Virus record (IMG/VR): IMGVR_UViG_3300010430_000003 | Coordinates: 1 to 64,000 of that record | Length of the DNA stretch: 64,000 nucleotides | Strand: one strand, 5' to 3' | Shown: in pieces, positions 18,510 to 51,165 of the stretch | Numbering within the stretch: the first letter of the stretch is position 1 | Layout of the letters: each line of letters begins with the position of its first letter | Notes under the pieces: generated by a model | The model's database searches: none | Told to the model about the DNA's origin: nothing | What the model saw: only the letters and a program-made list of their open reading frames with translations | Translations under genes and position numbers: made by a program

Positions 18510-18518
18510 AGAGGAAAA

Positions 18519-18776
18519 ATGATACTAACAGGAATGGTTATAGTTTATGTTATCATGATGATAACATTAACAGTTTATGAACTTGGAAATAGTTATCCAA
18601 TTACAGCAAGGGGATTAATTATCCAATTTTGTATTTGGGGTTTTATTTATTTTGCAGGCTATCAAGCCGGACAAATAAATTATTTTGATTTAAATAAACC
18701 AAAAGAGCAACATATGAACTCGGAACAAACAGAAGAGTTTTTTGGAGATTGGAAAAATGTCAAGACCAATCAATGA
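18519..18776 (+). CDS. Small membrane protein (two hydrophobic segments)
   Basis: MILTGMVIVYVIMMITLTV and GLIIQFCIWGFIYFAG; GAGG SD upstream. Confidence 0.6.
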   Translation: MILTGMVIVYVIMMITLTVYELGNSYPITARGLIIQFCIWGFIYFAGYQAGQINYFDLNKPKEQHMNSEQTEEFFGDWKNVKTNQ

Positions 18777-22380: not shown

Positions 22381-23358
22381 ATGTCATTTTTAGACAATAA
22401 AGAAGAGGTTGTAGTAATTGAATTAACTCCTCATGGAAAGCGTTTGATGAGGGACGGTAAATTCAAACCAACCTTTTATTCATTTGAGGACGAGGGGATT
22501 ATTTATGATTCTCTCTATGTAGATTTAACGGAAAATCAATCGGATGTTGAAGGTAGAATTTTGGACAATTCTGTTGTCACAGATCCTTTACCTGTAACAT
22601 ATGGCATTGAGACAAAATTTAGTCGCAAATCTAATGCAGCAACGCAGCATGAAAATGATCGGACCTATCTGGCCTCTCTGTACAGTCTGGGGACATCTGA
22701 GCTAAAGAACCAATATGCCCCTGCGTGGGAGGTGGATGTGCTTAGGGGTGAGATTACTGGCTCCTATGCGTACATCACAGGTAGCGGTGCAGATTCAATC
22801 TGGGATGTTCCCATACCGCAGATCACCCTTGCTACGCCAGAAATTAATCTAAATATTATCAATGGTATTACAGAAGTTCTTTTAGAGAAACTTGATTTGG
22901 GTGGATTGATTCAAGGGCTAGACTATGAAGTTCTTGAGGAGGACAACGCAATCATTGAAGTTACAAATGATTATCTCCTTATAGAACTTGATGAAATCAA
23001 TTCCGTATTTAAAAATGAGAATTTTGATGTTGAAGTCTTCCTTGTTGAAAGAGATGAATCAGTTACTGGGTCGAATGAAATATTGAGCCCTTTGTATTTT
23101 GAACCAACAGTAGTGGAAGGGGATATCTGGGTTCCTCCTTCTGAAGATGCTGATAGAGATCTCGTGCCAGAAGATGTTGAGTATTATCTTGAAATTCTAA
23201 TGGATTCAGAGATTGAAGAAGACATTTTATGCAAATATACTCAACCAGAGAAGAGAAAGGGTATTTATGGGAATAGGCTAACTGAGTGCGAAGATCAACT
23301 AATCTCCGACAACACTATTTATGATACAGATAATGACCAAGAAGAGGAAGAGTGCTAA
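22381..23358 (+). CDS. Putative tail/baseplate structural protein, N-terminally paralogous to 29899..30813
   Basis: MSFLDNK...ELTPHGKRLM..G.FKPTFYSFEDEGIIY versus MAFLPNN...VLTDEGRARL..G..FKVVKFSLADDEIDY. Confidence 0.55.
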   Translation: MSFLDNKEEVVVIELTPHGKRLMRDGKFKPTFYSFEDEGIIYDSLYVDLTENQSDVEGRILDNSVVTDPLPVTYGIETKFSRKSNAATQHENDRTYLASLYSLGTSELKNQYAPAWEVDVLRGEITGSYAYITGSGADSIWDVPIPQITLATPEINLNIINGITEVLLEKLDLGGLIQGLDYEVLEEDNAIIEVTNDYLLIELDEINSVFKNENFDVEVFLVERDESVTGSNEILSPLYFEPTVVEGDIWVPPSEDADRDLVPEDVEYYLEILMDSEIEEDILCKYTQPEKRKGIYGNRLTECEDQLISDNTIYDTDNDQEEEEC

Positions 23359-42396: not shown

Positions 42397-42485
42397 TGAG
42401 TCATGATTGGCAAGAGTATTATAAAGAAAAGTATGAAAAGGTTCTTGAACAATTAGAGCCACACTTTTTTAAGAGGAATAAATGA
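42396..42485 (+). CDS. 29-aa micro-ORF MSHDWQEYYKEKYEKVLEQLEPHFFKRNK
   Basis: Read manually; TAATG overlap with the upstream stop and ATGA overlap with the downstream start; GGAGG upstream. Confidence 0.55.
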   Translation: MSHDWQEYYKEKYEKVLEQLEPHFFKRNK

Positions 42486-45400
42486 AAATTGCTCACCTCG
42501 CCGACATTCATATTAGAAATTTGAAGTATCATGAAAATTACAAAAAAGTTTTTAATAAATTATATTCTTCTCTTAAAGAAAACGAGCCTGATGTAATAAT
42601 AGTTGCTGGGGATATAGCACATACAAAAATCTCCATCTCTCCAGAATATATTGACATCTCTTCTGATTTTTTGCGTAGTTTATCGTCACTACAAAAGACG
42701 ATAGTGATTCCGGGGAATCATGATATGGTCTTATCCAATCTCAACAGGCAAGATTCCATTTCACCAATTGTTAAAAATATTAATAATGATAATTTAATTT
42801 TTTTGAAAAAATCAATTAATTATCAAGTTGGAAATATTAATTTTGGCAATATATCAATTTGTGATGATATAATTCTAAAACCCAAGGAAGGTTATATTAA
42901 CATTGCTCTATATCATGGAGCTATCAAGGGTGCTAAAACAGATACCGGCTGGATTATTGAAAAGGGCGATCATGACGTTGAGATCTTTGATGGTTTTGAT
43001 TTTGCGATGCTTGGTGATATTCACAAATCAAACCAAGTCATGGATACAGAAGGCAGGGTAAGATACTGCGGGTCACTCATCCAGCAAAATTTTGGTGAAG
43101 ATCAAGAGAAAGGATATCTCATGTGGGATATTCAAGACACAGATAACTTTGAGTGTGAATTCATTCCATTGGAAAATGAATGCCCATTTGTTACTACTGA
43201 GTATGGAAACATGGGCACTATCCCTTCTAACTCAATGCTCCGAATCGTATTAACTGAGGCTCTCACTAAGAAGGAAGTAGATGATTATCTGATGTATGTG
43301 TCTGATACCTTTACTCCAAAGCTATTAACAACGATAACTGAGAAGAACTTTACAAAAACTGGAAACAATCTCAAAATCAATAATGATGATATTTTGCTTG
43401 ACGCAGTTCAAGAAAAGTTTTTAACAAATTATGTTGAGAGGGAGATTGAAGACGAAAGAATAAAAGGTAGAGTGTTGGAACTTGCCAACAACTACAAGCA
43501 AGATGTTAAAGATACTTCTTCAATTAATTGGACAATCGAAACAGCAGAATGGAGTAACCTTTTTTCTTATAAGGACAATAACAAAATATCCTTTGCAGAT
43601 AAACAAGGGATAACAGGGATTTTCGGTGCGAACTATTCAGGCAAATCATCTGTGGTAGAAATAATTCTGCTTGGCCTGTTTAATTCAACATCCAAATCAA
43701 TTCCGAAAAGTGTTGATTATATTAATGAAGACGAAAACTATGCAGAGGTTACTGTAACCTTAGTATCTGGTGAGGATGAAATTGAAATTGTCCGTTCCTT
43801 TACAAGAAAGAAGAATTCCGCAGCTACTACTGTTGATTTCTATATCAATGAAGAAAAGTTCAATGGTCAGTCAAGAACTGAGACTGATAAAATCATTCAG
43901 GCTTATTTGGGCTCTAAAGATGATTTCATGAATACGACAATTGCCACGCAGTTCGGCTCTCTCCAGTTTGTTGAATCCAAACCAACAGCTAGGAGGGAGA
44001 CAATCTCTCGGTTTTTTGGATTGGATGTATTTAGTGAAAAGCATAAAAGAGTGTCAGATGACTATTTGGAGAGCAAAGGAATTGTTGATCTCTTAAAGAA
44101 GAAGATTGACAGTGGTATTTCCATTTCTGATATTGAAGAAGAAATTGACAGGAAAAAGAAGTATTTGGAGGCTCACATTTCAACCAAGAACGTAAAAGAA
44201 CAGAGTCAATCTGAATATGCTGTGAGAGCCTCTGAGCTTGAATCTAAGCTAAAGAAGGTTCCCGCTGATATAGGAGATGTCTCTAGTCTGGAACAGAAGG
44301 TGAGGCAATATGAGAGCGCTGAAGGGCTAACTAAAAAAGAACTTGCTTCACTTCAAGAACGTGAGACTAATGTTGATGAAAAAATATCAAGAGTTAAGAA
44401 GGAACTTTTAAACATAGATTATGAAGCATTGCTAAGTAAGCGTGAAGTGTTGGATGGTTTTAAAAGTAAGAAGGAGACTGCCTTATCTATTAAAAGAGAC
44501 TTTGAGTTGCAAAGAGGTAAAATTGAGAGGGCAAAAGAAACTATAGCTAGCCCACCATGTCACAAGAACAATCTTAATTGCTGCAAGGTAAAAGAAGCTC
44601 AAAAGTTCTTAGATAGTCAAGATAAGCTTATAGAGAATGTCGAAAAGTCTCAAAAATTAATTGAAGCTGTTAATTCTAAAATTAGCCAATTTAATGAACA
44701 GGAGTTAAGGCTTCAAATTCAAGAAAAAGAAGACAAAGATAATCTTCTAAGAGAGTTAGAGACTTTGAAGATCAGTGTAGCTAACAAAATTAATAGCGCG
44801 CAGTTTAAAATAGACAAGATACTCTTTGAAAAGAAGAAGAGTAATGAAGCTCTTGAGAAGAGCAGAGAGAATACTAGTCTCTTTGAAGAAAAAGAGCAAA
44901 TGGAGAGTAAACTTGCAAGCTTAAAAAAGATATCTTCTAACATTGAAGGTGAAATTAAGAGCATTGATTGTGAAATAGCAAACTTAAATAAGTTTATTGG
45001 TGCCCAAGAAGAGAAAATTAAGACCGTCAATGACATGAGAGAAGAATACAACGACAAATTGTTTGATTTTGAAGCTTTGGAGTATTTAAGGAAAGCTTAC
45101 CACAATAAAGGAATTCCATTATTAATTATCAAGGACAAAATTCATATTTTGAACTCGAAAATTGATGAATTGCTTAGTGGAATTGTGGATTTTTCAATAT
45201 ACATCGAAGAGAATGAAAATATTGAAATTATGATTCATCACCCAAGACAAAAACCAAGAAAAATCAACTTGGGGTCTGGTGCTGAAAAGATCTTTGCTTC
45301 AATTGTTATCCGAATTGCCCTTATGAGTGTTACAAGTCTTTCTAAAGCAGAACTGTTCATTCTAGATGAACCAGCTACTGGCTTGGACGAGGAACATATG

Positions 45401-45541
45401 AGTGCTTTTATGAAGATTTTGGATGTTGTGAAGTATAATTATGAAAATGTGATTTTGATCACTCACTTGGGCATGTTAAAGGATAAAGTAGATTATGCTT
45501 TTGATGTTCAAAAGAGTGAAAACGTGTCGAGGATATTATGA
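42482..45541 (+). CDS. Fused SbcD/Mre11 (gp47-like) nuclease and SbcC/Rad50 (gp46-like) ATPase
   Basis: LADIH, AGD, PGNHD, LGDIH phosphoesterase motifs; Walker A GANYSGKSS; coiled coil; signature LGSGAEK; Walker B ILDEP; H-loop LITH. Confidence 0.92.
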   Translation: MKIAHLADIHIRNLKYHENYKKVFNKLYSSLKENEPDVIIVAGDIAHTKISISPEYIDISSDFLRSLSSLQKTIVIPGNHDMVLSNLNRQDSISPIVKNINNDNLIFLKKSINYQVGNINFGNISICDDIILKPKEGYINIALYHGAIKGAKTDTGWIIEKGDHDVEIFDGFDFAMLGDIHKSNQVMDTEGRVRYCGSLIQQNFGEDQEKGYLMWDIQDTDNFECEFIPLENECPFVTTEYGNMGTIPSNSMLRIVLTEALTKKEVDDYLMYVSDTFTPKLLTTITEKNFTKTGNNLKINNDDILLDAVQEKFLTNYVEREIEDERIKGRVLELANNYKQDVKDTSSINWTIETAEWSNLFSYKDNNKISFADKQGITGIFGANYSGKSSVVEIILLGLFNSTSKSIPKSVDYINEDENYAEVTVTLVSGEDEIEIVRSFTRKKNSAATTVDFYINEEKFNGQSRTETDKIIQAYLGSKDDFMNTTIATQFGSLQFVESKPTARRETISRFFGLDVFSEKHKRVSDDYLESKGIVDLLKKKIDSGISISDIEEEIDRKKKYLEAHISTKNVKEQSQSEYAVRASELESKLKKVPADIGDVSSLEQKVRQYESAEGLTKKELASLQERETNVDEKISRVKKELLNIDYEALLSKREVLDGFKSKKETALSIKRDFELQRGKIERAKETIASPPCHKNNLNCCKVKEAQKFLDSQDKLIENVEKSQKLIEAVNSKISQFNEQELRLQIQEKEDKDNLLRELETLKISVANKINSAQFKIDKILFEKKKSNEALEKSRENTSLFEEKEQMESKLASLKKISSNIEGEIKSIDCEIANLNKFIGAQEEKIKTVNDMREEYNDKLFDFEALEYLRKAYHNKGIPLLIIKDKIHILNSKIDELLSGIVDFSIYIEENENIEIMIHHPRQKPRKINLGSGAEKIFASIVIRIALMSVTSLSKAELFILDEPATGLDEEHMSAFMKILDVVKYNYENVILITHLGMLKDKVDYAFDVQKSENVSRIL

Positions 45542-45798
45542 TGCACATTAAAGAGTTGTTTGTAGAGAATGGTGAAGGAGATAAACTTTCAATGGGAAGG
45601 ATCATGGCATGGATGGTTTTCATCGTCATGATTATTTGGTGGTTCGCGAAGACTGGCGATATCCCAGAAAACATGCTTTATGTATTTGGTTTTCTTATGA
45701 GCTATAACTTTGGTAAGAAAGTTAAAGAGCTTGGAACCAACTATGTTGATGTTATTTCAACTAGAGCCGGCAAAACTGTTGAAAAACTAGAGGATTAA
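45538..45798 (+). CDS. Holin-like small membrane protein
   Basis: 86 aa, two hydrophobic segments, charged C-terminus. Confidence 0.5.
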   Translation: MMHIKELFVENGEGDKLSMGRIMAWMVFIVMIIWWFAKTGDIPENMLYVFGFLMSYNFGKKVKELGTNYVDVISTRAGKTVEKLED

Positions 45799-45802
45799 TA
45801 TT

Positions 45803-46177: not shown

Positions 46178-46604
46178 GATGGTAGTGTTCTTAAGTATTA
46201 TTTTGTTTTCAACAACCGCTTTTGCTCAAGAAGCCAAAATTGCTTATGTAAAACAGGGGGAGAAAGCTCCATATGCTGGATATCTCTTATCACCCTTGGC
46301 ATTGGCTGAACAGCAAGCAAAGTTAACTGTGGTTGAGGCTGAGTGGTCTGCTAAAATGAAATATGAACTTGATAAACAAAAAGCAGAAAATGATTATAAA
46401 CTAGCCGTTGAAAAATCAAACAGCAACTTTCTTAAAAAAGAAAATTTGATTGTTATTGATGAGAAAGAGTTTTGGAAAAAGCAATCAAAAAGAACTTTGT
46501 GGGAAAAGATTGATATGCCTGTTGGAATCGGAATTGGTTCTGTTGCTACCTATTATTTAATTACTGTGATGCTTAAGACGGTGAGACCTGATGAATTACA
46601 TTGA
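46167..46604 (+). CDS. Secreted/membrane coiled-coil protein (spanin-partner-like)
   Basis: SPase I-like signal (TAFA|QE), coiled coil, C-terminal hydrophobic segment; no lipobox Cys. Confidence 0.4.
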   Translation: MLNKMVVFLSIILFSTTAFAQEAKIAYVKQGEKAPYAGYLLSPLALAEQQAKLTVVEAEWSAKMKYELDKQKAENDYKLAVEKSNSNFLKKENLIVIDEKEFWKKQSKRTLWEKIDMPVGIGIGSVATYYLITVMLKTVRPDELH

Positions 46605-46950
46605 AGAAAGACCTTGGGGTAAGTTTGAAATAATTTATGAAAGTGATCAAATTAAGGTTAAAAAGATTACTGTAAATCCATATTCACGCTTATCATTGCA
46701 ATCTCACAACCACAGAGAAGAAGAGTGGACTGTTGTTGAAGGCGTATTGGGAGTTTCATATGGTGAGCACGTTGATGATATATTTGAAGTATATGTGCAT
46801 GTTGCTGGGTCGAAGCACATCCCACAAGGGGTGATTCATAGAGCTTTTAATGACACGTCTAAGAAAGCTGTTTTCATCGAAATCCAGAAAGGTACTTATT
46901 TTGGAGAAGATGATATCTTAAGATATGAGGATGATTATGGGCGAGATTAA
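46591..46950 (+). CDS. Cupin, mannose-6-phosphate isomerase type II C-terminal-like
   Basis: ERPWG, LSLQSH.HREEEW, HR..N, IEIQ.GTY.GEDDI.R.EDDYGR. Confidence 0.85.
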   Translation: MNYIEERPWGKFEIIYESDQIKVKKITVNPYSRLSLQSHNHREEEWTVVEGVLGVSYGEHVDDIFEVYVHVAGSKHIPQGVIHRAFNDTSKKAVFIEIQKGTYFGEDDILRYEDDYGRD

Positions 46951-47764
46951 AAGAGCGTTAGTTTTATCTGGTGGTGGTTCTAAGGGAGCATATCAAGTTG
47001 GTGTGCTTAAAGCACTTGCAGAAATGGGTCATAAATATGATGGTTATTATGGTGTATCTGTTGGTGCTCTTAATGCTGCATACCTCGGAATGTATTATGA
47101 TTTTGCAGATGGTGTAAAAGATTTAGAACAGAAATGGCTAAGTCTTGAAACTAAACGAATTTATAAGAAGTGGTTTGCGTGGCCTTTATCTATTCCATTT
47201 AAACCAAGTATTTATAACAGCACACCTCTTGAAAAGTGGGTGGGAGAAGAGATAAAAGAAGAAAAGTATATTAGACCTGTATCGGTTGGCTGGACTTCTC
47301 TTGCTACTGGTGAATATAGATCTATGAATAATGAGCACCCTGCTTTTAAGAAGTCTGTTATTGCCTCTGCTTCTTTTCCGGGGTTTTTTAAACCCGTTGA
47401 GTTTAGGAATGAATGGTTAATTGATGGTGGTGTCCGAAATGTCACACCACTTAAAGAAGCAATTGATTCTGGTGCTACGGAAATTGATTGTGTAGTTTTA
47501 GATGCCGCAGGTATTGAGTATTCTAATAAAAAACCCAAAACCCTTAATGTGTTATCACGCACAATCAATATCATGTTAGATGAAATTGTGGAGAACGATA
47601 TCAAAATGTGTCAGCTTTATAACAAGCACAATCTTGGTAGAAAGATCAAGTTAACAGTGTATAGACCTTCAAGCCCACTTGGTGTTAACTCACTTGATTT
47701 TAATTCTGAACAAAATAAAAAGTTGATGAAGTGGGGATATCAAGAAACATTTGAGTTAGTCTAA
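46925..47764 (+). CDS. Patatin-like phospholipase (likely start 46937)
   Basis: LVLSGGGSKG oxyanion loop, GVSVG nucleophile elbow, IDGG catalytic Asp. Confidence 0.92.
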   Translation: MRMIMGEIKRALVLSGGGSKGAYQVGVLKALAEMGHKYDGYYGVSVGALNAAYLGMYYDFADGVKDLEQKWLSLETKRIYKKWFAWPLSIPFKPSIYNSTPLEKWVGEEIKEEKYIRPVSVGWTSLATGEYRSMNNEHPAFKKSVIASASFPGFFKPVEFRNEWLIDGGVRNVTPLKEAIDSGATEIDCVVLDAAGIEYSNKKPKTLNVLSRTINIMLDEIVENDIKMCQLYNKHNLGRKIKLTVYRPSSPLGVNSLDFNSEQNKKLMKWGYQETFELV

Positions 47765-48176: not shown

Positions 48177-48695
48177 ATGGCTGATATTTACGAAATTACT
48201 AAGTTGATTAAACAAGCTGCGGCTGATGCCAAAGACCACCCATATGGTGGCAAAGATACTGGAGCGCTGGCAAGAGAAAAAGGACACGTAGTTAATGATT
48301 CACGAATTGTAGACGGATTTTCTGTTGGTGTTGGTGGCAACATTGTCACTATCACCTATGAAATTGAGTGCAAAATGAAAGACACTCATGCTAATAAATT
48401 TGATACTGATATTGAAACAACAATTAATGACTTAGCCTCTTATCTCAAAAAAGAGTATAAGAGTGCTAGTGGCGACACCCTAACTCTAACTCCTGATGGT
48501 GAAATGGATGTATTTATGCAAGAAGTTTCAAGGGTTAGGGTGCTCGTCAGAGCTTCCAAACATTATAAGATCGGGGGTGTTGACGAACCTGCCGATTCTC
48601 GTAAAGACAGAAAGAAGAAGTTTGATTCTTTAGAAACTATGTTAGAAACTAAATACAGCCCTGAAGTGGCATGGAAGAAGTACTTTGAGCAATAA
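48177..48695 (+). CDS. Hypothetical protein
   Basis: 172-aa ORF with GAGG SD. Confidence 0.6.
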   Translation: MADIYEITKLIKQAAADAKDHPYGGKDTGALAREKGHVVNDSRIVDGFSVGVGGNIVTITYEIECKMKDTHANKFDTDIETTINDLASYLKKEYKSASGDTLTLTPDGEMDVFMQEVSRVRVLVRASKHYKIGGVDEPADSRKDRKKKFDSLETMLETKYSPEVAWKKYFEQ

Positions 48696-49311
48696 ACTTA
48701 AAGAAGAAGATATTATAACAATCATTAAAGAAGAGTATAAAAGAGCTAAGCGTCGTGCCTCTGTTAGAGAGCAAGAGCTTGGTTCCCTCTCTGGCATCGA
48801 GATTGAAGAGTTGCTTGCCAATTACTTTTATCGGCACGGCGGGAAGATTCCAGAAAACATTATGAAGATGTCTGTTCTTTTCCCCATTTTGCAAAATGCT
48901 GGTTTGGGTAATATTGTTTCTTCTTATAAAAAGACTGCTGATACTTTTGGTAAAGATGCAGCGAGATTCATCTTGGCAGATGTGAAGAACGCCATTAAGA
49001 AGATCTCTGGCAATGATTTTGATTATGACGCAATTATTCAAAAGAGAGAGACAGAGTTATATGAACTTCTGAATAATCTTGCAATTGGAGATAAATTGAA
49101 TATTCCTTTTACATCTGGAAAACTTGCTAGGAATGAAATGGGAATATTGGATGAAACTGGTGAGCGCTTTATGTGGTCTGTGCAAGAGATTATGAATAAC
49201 ACAACAGATCTTCTAGAGTCTGAACTTACACTGCAACACGAAGCCACAGGGACACGAGCCAAAATGACATTTGGTGAGTTGATGGATTATCATGCTTACA
49301 AGGCGGAATAA
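48685..49311 (+). CDS. Hypothetical protein, possible internal head protein
   Basis: 208 aa with an N-terminal IITIIKEE leader. Confidence 0.5.
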   Translation: MSNKLKEEDIITIIKEEYKRAKRRASVREQELGSLSGIEIEELLANYFYRHGGKIPENIMKMSVLFPILQNAGLGNIVSSYKKTADTFGKDAARFILADVKNAIKKISGNDFDYDAIIQKRETELYELLNNLAIGDKLNIPFTSGKLARNEMGILDETGERFMWSVQEIMNNTTDLLESELTLQHEATGTRAKMTFGELMDYHAYKAE

Positions 49312-49401
49312 ATGAATCAGAAAGGCTTTACTCTCATCGAATTGATGATTTGGCTGTTATCAATTTTTGGACCATGTGCGTTCGGTGCTTTTTATCTTTA
49401 A
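49312..49401 (+). CDS. 29-aa type IV prepilin-like micro-peptide MNQKG|FTLIELMIWLLSIFGPCAFGAFYL
   Basis: Read manually; class III signal peptide QKG|FTLIEL with Glu+5; ATG abuts the upstream TAA; followed by a terminator. Confidence 0.7.
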   Translation: MNQKGFTLIELMIWLLSIFGPCAFGAFYL

Positions 49402-49426
49402 TTAGATAATTAGTTTGATGATGTGG

Positions 49427-49452
49427 CGAGACACACCGTGTCTCGTTTTTTT
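49427..49452 (+). terminator. Intrinsic terminator
   Basis: CGAGACAC-ACC-GTGTCTCG 8-bp stem followed by T7. Confidence 0.85.
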
Positions 49453-49475
49453 GTGTCTAAGGTGAATGAAAAATC

Positions 49476-49481
49476 TATTTA
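49476..49481 (+). promoter_or_regulatory. TATTTA late-promoter-like motif upstream of terminase
   Basis: TCTATTTAAG between the terminator and the GTG start at 49498. Confidence 0.5.
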
Positions 49482-49497
49482 AGGGTGATAACGTAAG

Positions 49498-51165
49498 GTG
49501 TCGTATATGCTCTCAAAGAAAAAATTACAACAAGAAATAATTAAATGCGGAAGGGATCCGATTTATTTTATCAAAATGTATTGCATGATTCAGGAGCCAA
49601 TTAAGGGTCATATCCCCTTTAATCTATTTCCATATCAGGAAGAGTTAATTCATGAATTTATCAACAATCGTTTTAATATTGTTTTAAAGGGCAGACAACT
49701 TGGTATTTCATGGTTATCATCTGCTTTTTGTTTATGGTTGATGATGTTCCGTCGAAACAAAGTTATCATGTCGGTTTCCACAAAAGAGAAAGTCGCAGCT
49801 AAAATTATTGAAAAAGTTAAGTATCAATATAAACACTTGCCAACTTTCCTTAAAGAGTTTAACGGTATTGATACCGATAATAATGCTAAATTTAAGTTTA
49901 TGAATGGATCGGAAGTTGTTGCTGAAACAACCACCTCTGATTCAGGTCGCTCATATTCCTTATCTCTTCTTATTATTGATGAAGCAGCTTATGTTGAAAA
50001 CCTTGATGGCGATCAGGGTCTTTGGACAGCGCTTGCCCCAACTCTTTCAACTGGTGGTCGAGCCATTGCATTCTCTTCTCCCGCTGGTGCCTCTGGTTGG
50101 TTTTATGAAACATATACAAGAGCCGCTGAAAACGAAATAAGACACGAGGCTGATTGGAACCCAATTAAATTAATGTGGTGGGTACATCCAAATAGAGATG
50201 ATGAGTGGTTCAAAGCACAAGAAGCAGCTATTCCAAATCCCAAAGCTCTTGCTCAAGAGCATTTGTGCGATTTTAGTGCTTCTGGTGATACTGTTATTTC
50301 TTCAGATGATTTGATTGATCTTAAGAGATTTTTAGATAGTATTAATGAAGAAACTGACGAAGAGCACAAAGAGCCCAAATTTAAAACATCTATAGATAGA
50401 AATTATTGGATTTGGCAAAGATACAATCCTGATCACAAATATGTGATGGGGGTTGATACATCGCGTGGTGATGGGAAAGACTTTTCAACGTTTCATATAA
50501 TGGATGTTGTTACTGATGAGATTGTAGCAGAATATAAAGGAAAAGTTCCCGCTGATATATATGCTGAGATAATTTACTCTGCTGCCGAAGAATATGGATT
50601 TCCACTTTTAGCTGTTGAGAAGAATATGGGTGAGGCTGTCCTGATGAAACTTCAGGAAATGGACACCCCTAATCTATATTGTCAAAAGAGAGGAACGAGT
50701 GAATTTATCCCTTATTCACAAATGGCGTATGATAATTCTGTAGTTCTTGGATTTGTTACGTCAGCTAGAAGCAAGGATTTGATTATTGCAAAAATGGAAG
50801 AGTTTATCCGTATGCGGAAGGTGAAGATATATTCAGAAAGATTATACAATGAATTCCTTAATTTCATGTGGGATGATAGTGGAAGGGCTAAAGCGAAAAG
50901 GGGATATAATGATGATCTCGTTATGTCTTTTGCAATAACAATTTGGATTAGGGAAACTGCAATTGAGCAAGATAAAAGAAAAAGATTGCATGACTCTGCC
51001 ATGTTGAATGCATTTAAGGCAGTCGGTAAAAAGTTTGACTATTCCCTTGAAGCATCGAAAGGGTTCGAAGCGGGGCCTTATTTAAAGAGGCAAAGCAAGC
51101 GTCAAGAAGATATAACTAATCGAAAGAAATATAGTTGGTTGTTTGATCCTGTTTACAAAGGCTAA
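49498..51165 (+). CDS. gp17: Terminase large subunit (T4 gp17-like)
   Basis: VLKGRQLGIS (Walker A-like), LLIIDEAA (Walker B), nuclease MGVDTSRGDGKDFS and DDLVMS. Confidence 0.95.
   Translation: MSYMLSKKKLQQEIIKCGRDPIYFIKMYCMIQEPIKGHIPFNLFPYQEELIHEFINNRFNIVLKGRQLGISWLSSAFCLWLMMFRRNKVIMSVSTKEKVAAKIIEKVKYQYKHLPTFLKEFNGIDTDNNAKFKFMNGSEVVAETTTSDSGRSYSLSLLIIDEAAYVENLDGDQGLWTALAPTLSTGGRAIAFSSPAGASGWFYETYTRAAENEIRHEADWNPIKLMWWVHPNRDDEWFKAQEAAIPNPKALAQEHLCDFSASGDTVISSDDLIDLKRFLDSINEETDEEHKEPKFKTSIDRNYWIWQRYNPDHKYVMGVDTSRGDGKDFSTFHIMDVVTDEIVAEYKGKVPADIYAEIIYSAAEEYGFPLLAVEKNMGEAVLMKLQEMDTPNLYCQKRGTSEFIPYSQMAYDNSVVLGFVTSARSKDLIIAKMEEFIRMRKVKIYSERLYNEFLNFMWDDSGRAKAKRGYNDDLVMSFAITIWIRETAIEQDKRKRLHDSAMLNAFKAVGKKFDYSLEASKGFEAGPYLKRQSKRQEDITNRKKYSWLFDPVYKG

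What the first reader, a model, noticed from the sequence alone, without database searches (positions are those of the whole stretch)
49312..49401. Hidden 29-aa type IV pilin mimic: only the signal peptide and membrane helix
Seen: an ORF below the track cutoff, MNQKG|FTLIELMIWLLSIFGPCAFGAFYL, between a stop codon and a strong terminator, just upstream of terminase. FTLIELMI is the canonical type IVa pilin N-terminus including Glu5, and there is no globular domain. Known: prepilin peptidase PilD cleaves such G|F sites, pilin helices drive T4P/T2SS assembly, and some Pseudomonas prophages block pili with pilin-like proteins. Inference: a minimal dominant-negative pilin or PilD decoy that shuts down the pilus (receptor masking or superinfection exclusion), here in a large lytic-type phage. 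It also hints that the host has type IV pili.
Basis: partly seen in the sequence, partly recalled or inferred. Interest (0 to 1): 0.8.

Follow-up and report, generated by a model that had tools for sequence, protein, structure and literature searches.

The report
Phage mini-pilin: 29-residue prepilin-like peptide
A T4-like phage from marine sediment carries a real, conserved 29-codon gene that encodes only the signal peptide and membrane helix of a type IV pilin; it probably interferes with the host's pilus-type machinery, but that function is untested.

Summary
Window 49312-49401 (+) is a 29-codon ORF that starts directly after the stop of a 208-aa gene. An SD-like AAGGCGG precedes it, and the best terminator in 10 kb follows it, 105 nt before the T4-type large terminase.

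It passes the curated cut-offs of both prepilin N-terminus models (PF07963 24.7/21.2 bits; TIGR02532 20.8/16.3). The predicted mature product is a 24-residue hydrophobic helix with no globular part.

It is a real gene. A relative whose flanking proteins are 85-92% identical keeps a 29-codon ORF with the same start, stop, G-1, F+1 and E+5. Of 23 nucleotide changes, 14 fall at third codon positions (pN 0.13, pS 0.75; permutation P about 5e-5), and no other frame is open in both.

It is lineage-specific and sits in a variable accessory slot. Other relatives carry unrelated genes there. A search of 1.84 billion representatives found no further member.

Short pilin-like genes are not new in virulent phages: 58-82 aa in all 28 KVP40-like Vibrio phage records found, 36-95 aa in many IMG/VR contigs, and a 60-residue PilA-like family noted in print in 2026. 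All are functionally untested.

I read this one as the extreme, membrane-helix-only variant. It most likely acts as a PilD-processed pseudo-subunit or decoy of type IV filament machines.

The parts
49312..49401 (+). Mini-prepilin gene: 29 codons plus TAA. The leader MNQKG is 49312-49326, and the predicted PilD cleavage site lies between G5 (49324-49326) and F6 (49327-49329). The predicted mature 24-residue hydrophobic helix is 49327-49398, with E+5 at 49339-49341.
   Evidence: ORF. (PF07963 and TIGR02532 above their cut-offs). (ortholog in L024/L025: 72% amino-acid identity, pN 0.126, pS 0.75, differences by codon position 6:3:14, P about 5e-5). (identical copies in L031 and L036-L038).
49300..49306 (+). 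SD-like AAGGCGG, 5 nt upstream of the ATG and embedded in the last codons (K-A-E) of the upstream gene.
   Evidence: (SD-like cores precede 28 of 43 long ORFs in the window, against a background of 0.17). L024 has AAGG at -13 to -10.
48685..49311 (+). Upstream 208-aa gene of unknown function, the conserved left flank of the slot. Its stop abuts the mini-prepilin start codon.
   Evidence: relatives at 58-85% identity. (no family hit). (AF2 pLDDT 70.7, no PDB fold match at E<=0.001).
49425..49454 (+). Intrinsic-terminator-like hairpin (10-bp stem, 3-nt loop) plus T-run. It ends the transcription unit that carries the mini-prepilin gene.
   Evidence: The stem and T-run are conserved in L024.
49402..49506 (+). 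105-nt spacer, 90% identical between the two phage variants, which is more than the flanking coding DNA (74-86%). It holds the terminator and a conserved box with CTATTTAAG (49475-49483), a candidate promoter for TerL.
   Evidence: alignment. (CTATTTA lies 26-44 nt upstream of four further start codons; three of the five sites lie in the few long intergenic gaps).
49498..51165 (+). Large terminase subunit (T4 type), the right flank of the slot. The likely start is the ATG at 49507.

Best explanation
Shown: window 49312-49401 is a genuine protein-coding accessory gene under purifying selection in a roughly 210-kb T4-like phage from marine sediment. Its product has a complete bacterial class III (prepilin) signal peptide: a short basic leader, G-1, F+1 and E+5. 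This is followed only by a hydrophobic, aromatic-rich membrane helix, and there is no periplasmic domain.

Inferred:
1. The peptide inserts into the host inner membrane N-in/C-out, as a prepilin does.
2. The host prepilin peptidase PilD cleaves it after Gly5 and N-methylates it.
3. The resulting 24-residue pseudo-subunit, or the precursor itself, engages the parts of type IV filament machines that handle pilin membrane helices. These are PilD, the PilC/PilMNO platform and the base of the growing fibre.
4. Because it has no head domain, it cannot extend a stable filament. It would therefore act as a competitive or dominant-negative inhibitor of pilus assembly. T2SS or competence-pilus assembly are equally possible targets.

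The likely payoff for a virulent phage is exclusion of pilus-dependent competitors, or avoiding loss of progeny on infected cells and debris.
For: Gene reality:
- An ortholog in L024/L025 has the same length, start and stop. It lies in a different phase relative to the upstream stop (TGA-A-ATG against TAA-ATG), so the ORF is an independent cistron and not a read-through tail.
- 14.5 synonymous against 8.5 non-synonymous changes, with pN/pS 0.17, similar to the neighbours at 0.08-0.14. Binomial P 7e-5, permutation P 5e-5. None of the other five frames is open in both variants.
- An SD-like site precedes it.
- Identical copies occur in at least 5 independent assemblies and 4 sediment runs.

Prepilin nature:
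- PF07963 and TIGR02532 are above their curated cut-offs in both variants.
- G-1, F+1 and E+5 are invariant.
- The mature part is 24 residues with GRAVY 1.75-2.04.

Accessory character: the slot between the 208-aa gene and TerL carries different genes in relatives. This is typical of host-interaction genes.

Precedent:
- Sztanko et al. 2026 (PMC12952977, section 17) report a family of 60-residue PilA N-terminal fragments in six virulent Pseudomonas phages. They propose either incorporation into the pilus or inhibition of T4P assembly.
- The 30-residue membrane protein PfsE blocks T4P by binding PilC (PMC8764522).
- Short pilin-like genes are conserved in all 28 KVP40-like records found and are common in IMG/VR.
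Against: - There is no functional, expression or processing evidence. No RNA run was listed.
- The host is unknown, so the presence of PilD or T4P is assumed.
- Only two sequence variants exist and dS is saturated, so the selection test rests on one pairwise comparison.
- The pilin HMMs align only to residues 1-13. The rest of the helix (from W9, with G15-P16-C17) resembles no pilin.
- A 24-residue product may be too short for PilD or platform recognition.
- The gene ends an operon that lies next to the packaging genes. Expression may therefore be late, which fits classical early superinfection exclusion less well.
- The closest other relatives lack it.
Confidence: 0.45

Rival explanations
1. 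It is a generic small membrane peptide whose target is not a type IV filament machine. Examples are a holin/antiholin-like lysis-timing factor, a membrane-depolarising peptide, or an exclusion factor acting on DNA entry. On this view the prepilin-like N-terminus is retained only as an efficient insertion and topology signal, inherited from a captured pilin 5' end.
For: - Only residues 1-13 match the pilin models. Residues 14-29 are unique to this lineage.
- T4-like phages encode many small membrane proteins, and further unannotated small TM ORFs lie in gaps of this window.
- The operon-end position next to the packaging genes is compatible with late expression.
Against: - G-1, F+1 and E+5 are exactly the residues needed for PilD processing and pilin assembly. 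A charged Glu inside a TM helix is costly unless used, yet all three are invariant while neighbouring positions change.
- Convergent retention of the same motif in many unrelated short phage ORFs points to a motif-dependent function.
Confidence: 0.25
2. It is a camouflage subunit. The mini-pilin is co-polymerised into otherwise functional pili, as proposed for P-FimU and as one option for the 60-residue phage PilA fragments. This would dilute or alter phage-binding surfaces without stopping assembly.
For: The P-FimU precedent and the authors' suggestion for truncated PilA (PMC12952977, sections 17-18). E+5 and F+1, which make the inter-subunit salt bridge in filaments (established pilus structural knowledge), are conserved.
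Against: The mature product has 24 residues, less than half of the roughly 53-residue alpha-1 helix. It has no alpha-1C or head to contact neighbours in the outer shell. A gap of that kind is more likely to stall or weaken the fibre than to be tolerated.
Confidence: 0.08
3. It is a regulatory upstream ORF. Translation of the short ORF just before the hairpin would tune termination or read-through into the terminase gene, and the peptide itself would be irrelevant.
For: The stop codon lies 23 nt before the terminator stem. The spacer is unusually conserved, at 90%.
Against: - Selection acts on the amino-acid sequence along the whole ORF, including a specific protein motif.
- Relatives that lack the ORF still place TerL behind the same kind of gap.
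- A ribosome at the stop codon would not reach the stem.
- There is no Rfam match.
Confidence: 0.05
4. It is a non-functional relic or a spurious ORF: a captured 5' fragment of a bacterial pilin gene that runs into non-coding DNA.
For: - It is very short and lineage-restricted.
- The gene caller skipped it on most contigs.
- In the same sediment runs, pilin 5' ends of co-occurring bacteria match 33-39 nt of it at 82-91% identity.
Against: - The length and reading frame are preserved at 26% nucleotide divergence, with a third-position bias.
- Only 35% of permuted sequences even stay stop-free, and 5e-5 reach the observed amino-acid identity.
- The C-terminal half is also constrained: four synonymous codon changes, and five conservative replacements that keep it hydrophobic.
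Confidence: 0.05

Closest known systems
Truncated PilA-like proteins of virulent Pseudomonas phages (about 60 N-terminal residues), noted by Sztanko et al., Cell Rep 2026 (PMC12952977)
   Same: A non-temperate phage encodes only the N-terminal helical part of a type IV pilin. The proposed roles are incorporation without phage-binding sites, or inhibition of T4P assembly. Function is untested in both cases.
   Different: This one is half that size: 29-residue precursor, 24 mature. It has only the membrane-embedded alpha-1N and none of alpha-1C. Beyond residue 8 of the mature part it does not resemble PilA. The host and environment differ (marine sediment, unknown host). I did not hold those sequences, so no direct alignment was made.
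Short pilin-like hypothetical proteins of KVP40-like Vibrio phages (Schizotequatrovirus; for example phi-Grn1 ALP47300.1 at 67 aa and NVP1081O_058 at 82 aa), and the weakly matching PHROG families 13280 and 10597
   Same: A T4-like virulent phage carries the same leader-G|FTLIEL motif and a short product. The gene is conserved across the whole phage group (28 records).
   Different: Those proteins keep a canonical alpha-1N (VLIAILGILA...) plus a 30-50-residue periplasmic tail that often contains Cys. They sit next to thymidylate synthase rather than next to TerL. Similarity to the window peptide is weak: tblastn E=2-7 and PHROG E=0.001-0.009.
PfsE (PA0721) of Pseudomonas filamentous phage Pf4
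   Same: A phage-encoded inner-membrane peptide of about 30 residues, rich in aromatic residues. PfsE binds PilC, transiently blocks T4P extension and excludes T4P-dependent phages (PMC8764522). It is a working model for how a peptide of this size can disable the machine.
   Different: PfsE has no prepilin signal and carries a YAWGW cluster that is absent here. It comes from a temperate, chronic inovirus. No homology was tested or is claimed.
Prophage FimU mimics (P-FimU) of F10-like Pseudomonas phages
   Same: A phage-encoded type IV pilin family member used in phage-versus-phage competition (PMC12952977).
   Different: P-FimU are full-length minor pilins with extra loops. They are built into functional pili and do not inhibit assembly. 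They are prophage-expressed.
Bacterial type IV pilins and pseudopilins, including the shortest known (Flp/Tad pilins and the Geobacter PilA-N type, as I recall them)
   Same: A class III signal peptide, G-1, F+1, E+5 and a hydrophobic alpha-1N.
   Different: Even the shortest known pilins, with roughly 40-60 mature residues (from my own knowledge), contain a full alpha-1. This peptide stops at the membrane boundary and is not encoded with any pilus biogenesis genes.

Membership tests
Prepilin-type N-terminal cleavage/methylation (class III signal peptide) proteins: PF07963 / TIGR02532 | Score above the curated HMM cut-off | tested here: met
   PF07963 scores 24.7 bits against a cut-off of 21.2. 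TIGR02532 scores 20.8 bits for the window and 16.9 for the L024 variant, against a cut-off of 16.3.
Prepilin-type N-terminal cleavage/methylation (class III signal peptide) proteins: PF07963 / TIGR02532 | Short basic leader ending in Gly(-1), hydrophobic +1 (Phe), Glu at +5, then about 20 hydrophobic residues | tested here: met
   The leader is MNQKG in the window and MNKKG in L024. F+1 and E+5 are invariant in both variants. The mature part is 24 residues with GRAVY 1.75 and 2.04.
Prepilin-type N-terminal cleavage/methylation (class III signal peptide) proteins: PF07963 / TIGR02532 | Cleavage and N-methylation by a prepilin peptidase (PilD/GspO/ComC) | not testable with these tools
   This needs biochemistry or MS. 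The host, and therefore its PilD, is unknown.
Type IV pilin / pseudopilin proper (a filament subunit) | A full alpha-1 helix (about 50 residues) plus a C-terminal globular or periplasmic domain | tested here: not met
   The ORF ends 24 residues after the predicted cleavage site. No pilin-like continuation exists in any frame before the terminator.
Type IV pilin / pseudopilin proper (a filament subunit) | Encoded with, or dependent on, pilus biogenesis genes, and polymerises into a filament | not testable with these tools
   The context is phage structural and packaging genes. Polymerisation cannot be tested in silico here.
Phage truncated PilA-like proteins (PMC12952977) | Encoded by a non-temperate tailed phage | tested here: inconclusive
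   T4-type TerL, portal gp20 and MCP gp23 are present in the window, and the contig is 210 kb. Only 64 kb was read, so the absence of lysogeny genes in the rest is not shown.
Phage truncated PilA-like proteins (PMC12952977) | Comprises about the N-terminal 60 residues of PilA, with recognisable PilA similarity | tested here: not met
   The protein has 29 residues in total. The HMM alignments cover only residues 1-13. A profile search of 1.84 billion representatives found no relative other than the protein itself.
KVP40-like short pilin-like proteins / PHROG 13280, 10597 | Significant profile match over the whole protein | tested here: inconclusive
   PHROG E-values are 0.001-0.009, driven by the N-terminal motif. 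tblastn E-values are 2-7.
PfsE-like T4P inhibitors | A small single-pass inner-membrane phage peptide with an aromatic cluster (YAWGW) that binds PilC | tested here: inconclusive
   Size and hydrophobicity are alike, and the mature part has 5-6 aromatic residues. The YAWGW motif described in PMC8764522 is absent. Binding cannot be tested here.

The most novel reading that the evidence does not exclude
A 24-residue mature 'pilin' that consists only of the membrane-embedded alpha-1N helix would be a natural minimal inhibitor of type IV filament machines. It would be processed by PilD and then jam the platform or cap the fibre base. That would make it the smallest known class III signal-peptide protein. 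It would also be the end point of a widespread, functionally unexplored series of phage mini-pilins (29 to about 95 aa) that virulent phages use against pili, T2SS or competence machinery.
Probability: 0.35. Interest if true: 0.75.

Novelty: new variant of a known kind. Interest (0 to 1): 0.55.

Why it matters
If the peptide acts as inferred, it defines the minimal sequence that the type IV filament machinery (PilD, the PilC/PilMNO platform and the fibre base) recognises. It would also be a compact natural tool for switching off pili, type II secretion or competence.

It further connects scattered observations into one class of phage accessory genes whose biology nobody has tested. Those observations are the 60-residue PilA fragments in Pseudomonas phages, a conserved 58-82-aa gene in all KVP40-like phages, and dozens of 36-95-aa pilin-like ORFs in IMG/VR.

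On the practical side, gene callers skipped the ORF on most contigs, the 210-kb one included. Such genes are therefore systematically under-annotated.

Tried and rejected
- **DNA search against isolate phages:** blastn of the locus against 50,697 phage records found no match. The nearest isolate by TerL is Flavobacterium phage immuto at 36%.
- **Distant TerL relatives:** 21 IMG/VR relatives at about 43% identity have no pilin-like motif near TerL.
- **Degenerate DNA pattern for G-F-T-L-[IV]-E-L-[ML]-I-W:**
  - Viral contigs returned only the window's own contig.
  - Metagenome contigs returned the same phage, ordinary full-length pilins, and one uninformative ORF cut by a contig end beside galE.
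  - Genome contigs returned only ordinary minor pilins or chance hits, so no host clue and no bacterial homolog.
- **Profile search:** a profile of the two variants against 1.84 billion representatives found only the window's own protein at a convincing level. The two other hits (E about 4e-4) are longer proteins matching the motif alone.
- **ESM Atlas:** it lists clusters of 26-39-aa N_methyl proteins at score 0.89, below the level the tool treats as reliable, and these may be contig-end fragments. I did not use them as evidence.
- **Is the 208-aa neighbour the small terminase?** There is no family hit. The AF2 model has pLDDT 70.7, and no PDB fold match reaches E<=0.001. The question stays unresolved.
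- **Read-through fusion with the upstream gene:** rejected. The two ORFs are in frame in the window but out of frame in L024.
- **Known structured RNA:** no Rfam match at E<=1.
- **RNA evidence:** no RNA run was listed. The laid DNA contigs only confirm presence and identity.
- **tRNAs as a host clue:** none in the window.
- **Recurring 12-mer around the TerL promoter box:** not above chance. Only the shorter CTATTTA is suggestive.

Full report
**1. The observation**

Window 49312-49401 (+) is an ATG-initiated ORF of 29 codons ending in TAA.

- It starts on the base after the TAA stop of a 208-aa gene (48685-49311).
- An SD-like AAGGCGG lies at 49300-49306. The phage does use SD sites: 28 of 43 long ORFs have an SD-like core, against 17% at random positions.
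- 23 nt after its stop comes the best terminator-like hairpin in a 10-kb scan (49425-49447, 10 bp, followed by a T-run).
- The T4-type large terminase (PF03237) starts at 49498/49507.

The peptide passes the curated cut-offs of both models of the prepilin N-terminus: PF07963 at 24.7 against 21.2 bits, and TIGR02532 at 20.8 against 16.3 bits.

Its layout is a five-residue basic leader ending in Gly, then Phe+1 and Glu+5, then an unbroken hydrophobic stretch to the C-terminus. The predicted mature part has 24 residues, GRAVY 1.75 and six aromatic residues.

The pilin motif is expected 0.005-0.035 times per shuffled window over six frames. It occurs once, here.

**2. What the genome is**

The window equals positions 1-64000 of IMGVR_UViG_3300010430_000003, a 210-kb contig.

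- It encodes a T4-type portal (PF07230), a gp23-type major capsid protein (PF07068) and a fused Mre11/Rad50-like protein.
- The closest isolate by TerL is only 36% identical (Flavobacterium phage immuto).
- Runs holding the locus are marine sediment metagenomes.
- No tRNA gene and no bacterial homolog of the peptide point to a host. SD usage argues weakly against an SD-poor host such as Bacteroidota (inference).

**3. Is it a gene?**

The 208-aa neighbour has relatives at 85, 83, 75, 67 and 58% identity. I fetched their contigs.

In the 85% relative (L024/L025, from two runs) a 29-codon ORF sits in the same place. It has the same start and stop and 72% amino-acid identity.

Evidence for selection on the protein:

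- Of 23 nucleotide differences, 6, 3 and 14 fall at codon positions 1, 2 and 3.
- Nei-Gojobori counts are 14.5 synonymous and 8.5 non-synonymous changes (pS 0.75, pN 0.126).
- The flanking genes are comparable: pN/pS is 0.14 for the 208-aa gene and 0.08 for TerL.
- None of the five other frames is open in both sequences.
- A binomial test gives 7e-5. A permutation that re-places the same substitutions gives 5e-5 for reaching the observed amino-acid identity without a stop, and only 35% of permutations stay stop-free.
- G-1, F+1, E+5, W+9 and the block I-F-G-P-C-A-F are invariant.
- Both halves of the ORF carry synonymous changes, so the unique C-terminal half is constrained too.

In the window the ORF is in frame with the upstream gene (TAA-ATG). 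In L024 it is out of frame (TGA-A-ATG). It is therefore an independent cistron, not a read-through extension.

Identical copies occur in L031 and L036-L038 and in four sediment runs. Gene callers recorded the peptide on only one 1.7-kb contig.

The limit of this evidence is that there are only two sequence variants and dS is saturated.

**4. Distribution and context**

The slot between the 208-aa gene and TerL is variable:

| Relative (identity of the 208-aa protein) | What occupies the slot |
|---|---|
| 83% | three genes of 335, 232 and 387 aa |
| 75% | one 169-aa protein with a hydrophobic, signal-peptide-like N-terminus |
| 67% | one 87-aa protein |
| 58% | another, non-pilin ORF |

- None of 21 more distant TerL relatives has a pilin motif nearby.
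- Pattern scans of viral, metagenome and genome collections found nothing beyond the same phage.
- A profile search of 1.84 billion representatives found nothing convincing beyond the window's own protein.

The gene is therefore a lineage-specific accessory gene in a hot spot.

The 105-nt spacer after it is 90% identical between the two variants, more than any coding part (74-86%). It contains the terminator and a CTATTTAAG box. CTATTTA also lies 26-44 nt upstream of four other start codons. I infer that TerL has its own promoter and that the mini-prepilin gene closes the preceding transcription unit. That unit also holds a cupin, a patatin-like phospholipase and three unknown genes. Its timing is unknown.

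**5. Comparable genes elsewhere**

- PHROGs holds several unknown-function families of 59-72 residues that match weakly through the N-terminus.
- tblastn found short pilin-like genes in KVP40-like Vibrio phages, 67 and 82 aa, with a canonical leader-G|FTLIEL start and a short tail. The gene is present in all 28 records of that group, KVP40 and nt-1 included.
- KVP40's receptor is OmpK, not a pilus (PMC13609209).
Among 110 complete ORFs the mature length runs from 14 to 321 residues, with a median of 137.
- That set has a distinct population of 32-90 residues. Two are 36-aa ORFs (L078, L133) with no pilin continuation in any frame.
- The window's ORF is the shortest convincing one, but it sits at the end of a continuum.

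**6. Literature**

- Sztanko et al. (Cell Rep 2026, PMC12952977) show that prophage FimU mimics are built into functional pili and block tip-binding phages.
- In section 17 of that paper they note four groups of PilA-like proteins in non-temperate phages. One is a family of 60-residue N-terminal fragments in six Pseudomonas phages. They suggest either incorporation without phage-binding sites or inhibition of assembly. Neither was tested.
- PfsE, a 30-residue membrane protein of phage Pf4, inhibits T4P by binding PilC (PMC8764522). A peptide of this size can therefore disable the machine.
- I found no paper on the KVP40 gene, and no paper on phage-encoded truncated pilins in a phrase search.

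**7. Mechanism**

Shown: a conserved, SD-preceded, terminator-followed cistron that encodes a class III signal peptide plus one membrane helix.

The following rests on established pilin biology and is inference for this peptide. Prepilins insert N-in/C-out. PilD cleaves after G-1 and methylates F+1. E+5 pairs with the N-terminus of the neighbouring subunit, and alpha-1N is both the membrane anchor and the fibre core.

- The peptide should be inserted and processed like a prepilin.
- Lacking alpha-1C and a head domain, it would compete for PilD and for the platform's pilin-docking site, or it would enter the fibre base and stall or weaken it.
- The invariant Glu inside a membrane helix is hard to explain unless the pilin-specific interactions are used.
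- Which machine is hit (T4aP, T2SS or competence pilus), and whether the benefit is exclusion of competitors or protection of progeny, cannot be decided here.

I give this explanation 0.45. The rivals are:

| Rival | Confidence |
|---|---|
| A membrane peptide with a non-pilus target that merely keeps a prepilin-type insertion signal | 0.25 |
| A camouflage subunit in functional pili | 0.08 |
| A regulatory upstream ORF | 0.05 |
| A relic or spurious ORF | 0.05 |

**8. Membership**

It belongs to the prepilin-type N-terminal motif family by HMM thresholds and motif. It fails the definition of a pilin proper, because it has no alpha-1C and no globular domain. It is not demonstrably homologous to the KVP40-type or 60-residue phage families beyond the shared motif.

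It works most like the proposed truncated phage PilA proteins and, by size and location, like PfsE. It is a member of neither.

**9. Verdict**

The finding is real and better supported than a first reading could show. Conservation and selection are now demonstrated. Its interpretation is plausible and is paralleled by a recent published suggestion, but it is untested.

It is a new, extreme variant of a kind of phage gene that has been noticed but never studied. Interest is 0.55.

Noticed in passing
window 49402-49506; L024:2538-2642: The 105-nt spacer between the mini-prepilin gene and TerL is 90% identical between two phages whose coding DNA is only 74-86% identical. It holds the terminator and a fully conserved stretch with CTATTTAAG. 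CTATTTA also lies 26-44 nt upstream of the start codons at 23352, 35677, 39016 and 55321, so it is a candidate (late?) promoter element.
   Followed up: partly
window 42482-45541: A single 1019-aa protein combines an Mre11-like phosphoesterase (PF00149) with a Rad50-like SMC_N/AAA_23 part. It is a fusion of what T4 encodes as separate gp47 and gp46. The same 1019-aa architecture occurs in relative L027.
   Followed up: no
window 46591-47764: A cupin (mannose-6-phosphate isomerase C-terminal type, 93 bits) and a patatin-like phospholipase (120 bits) lie in the same gene string as the mini-prepilin gene. Both are conserved in relatives (L024, L027, L036). A phospholipase next to a membrane peptide could be a coordinated envelope-directed module.
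   Followed up: no
slot between the 208-aa gene and TerL in L026:1156-1665, L027:4669-4932, and the contig of P0005: The slot is an accessory-gene hot spot. In different relatives it holds a 169-aa protein with a hydrophobic signal-peptide or lipoprotein-like N-terminus, an 87-aa protein, or three genes (335, 232 and 387 aa). None has a Pfam or PHROG match on record or in my PHROG scan.
   Followed up: partly
L026:3881-5159 (the gene runs off the locus): The portal gene of the 75% relative is recorded as 1207 aa, with intein-splicing, Hint and LAGLIDADG hits inside Portal_T4. It is an intein-containing portal.
   Followed up: no
L040:1501-1704 (Vibrio phage phi-Grn1), L041:1501-1749 (Vibrio phage 1.081.O), and 26 further records: All KVP40-like Schizotequatroviruses found carry a 58-82-aa pilin-like 'hypothetical protein'. 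In the two records inspected it lies immediately upstream of thymidylate synthase. KVP40 itself uses OmpK as its receptor, so this is a cultivable system for testing phage mini-pilins.
   Followed up: partly
IMG/VR loci L045, L046, L058, L061, L074, L101, L119, L142 and others: A recurrent family of about 77-94-aa pilin-like proteins occurs in viral contigs. It has a conserved C-terminal block (…NGMTE.RCI(E/D)GYKF(V/I).G..GQARQ(I/V)(L/M)DEFGKG(V/A)(R/K)C). The family is distinct from the window peptide and its function is unknown.
   Followed up: no
window 18510-18741 and 45542-45802: Two gaps longer than 230 nt between long ORFs each contain an unlisted short ORF that encodes a hydrophobic, probably membrane-spanning peptide. 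Small membrane proteins may be generally under-called in this genome.
   Followed up: no
window 49313-49356, runs X4 and X5: In the same sediment runs, unrelated contigs of higher depth (up to 19.7 kb) align only to the motif-coding 33-39 nt, at 82-91% identity. They then continue as canonical pilin sequence. Bacteria with canonical pilin-type (class III) N-termini therefore co-occur, but this does not identify the host.
   Followed up: no
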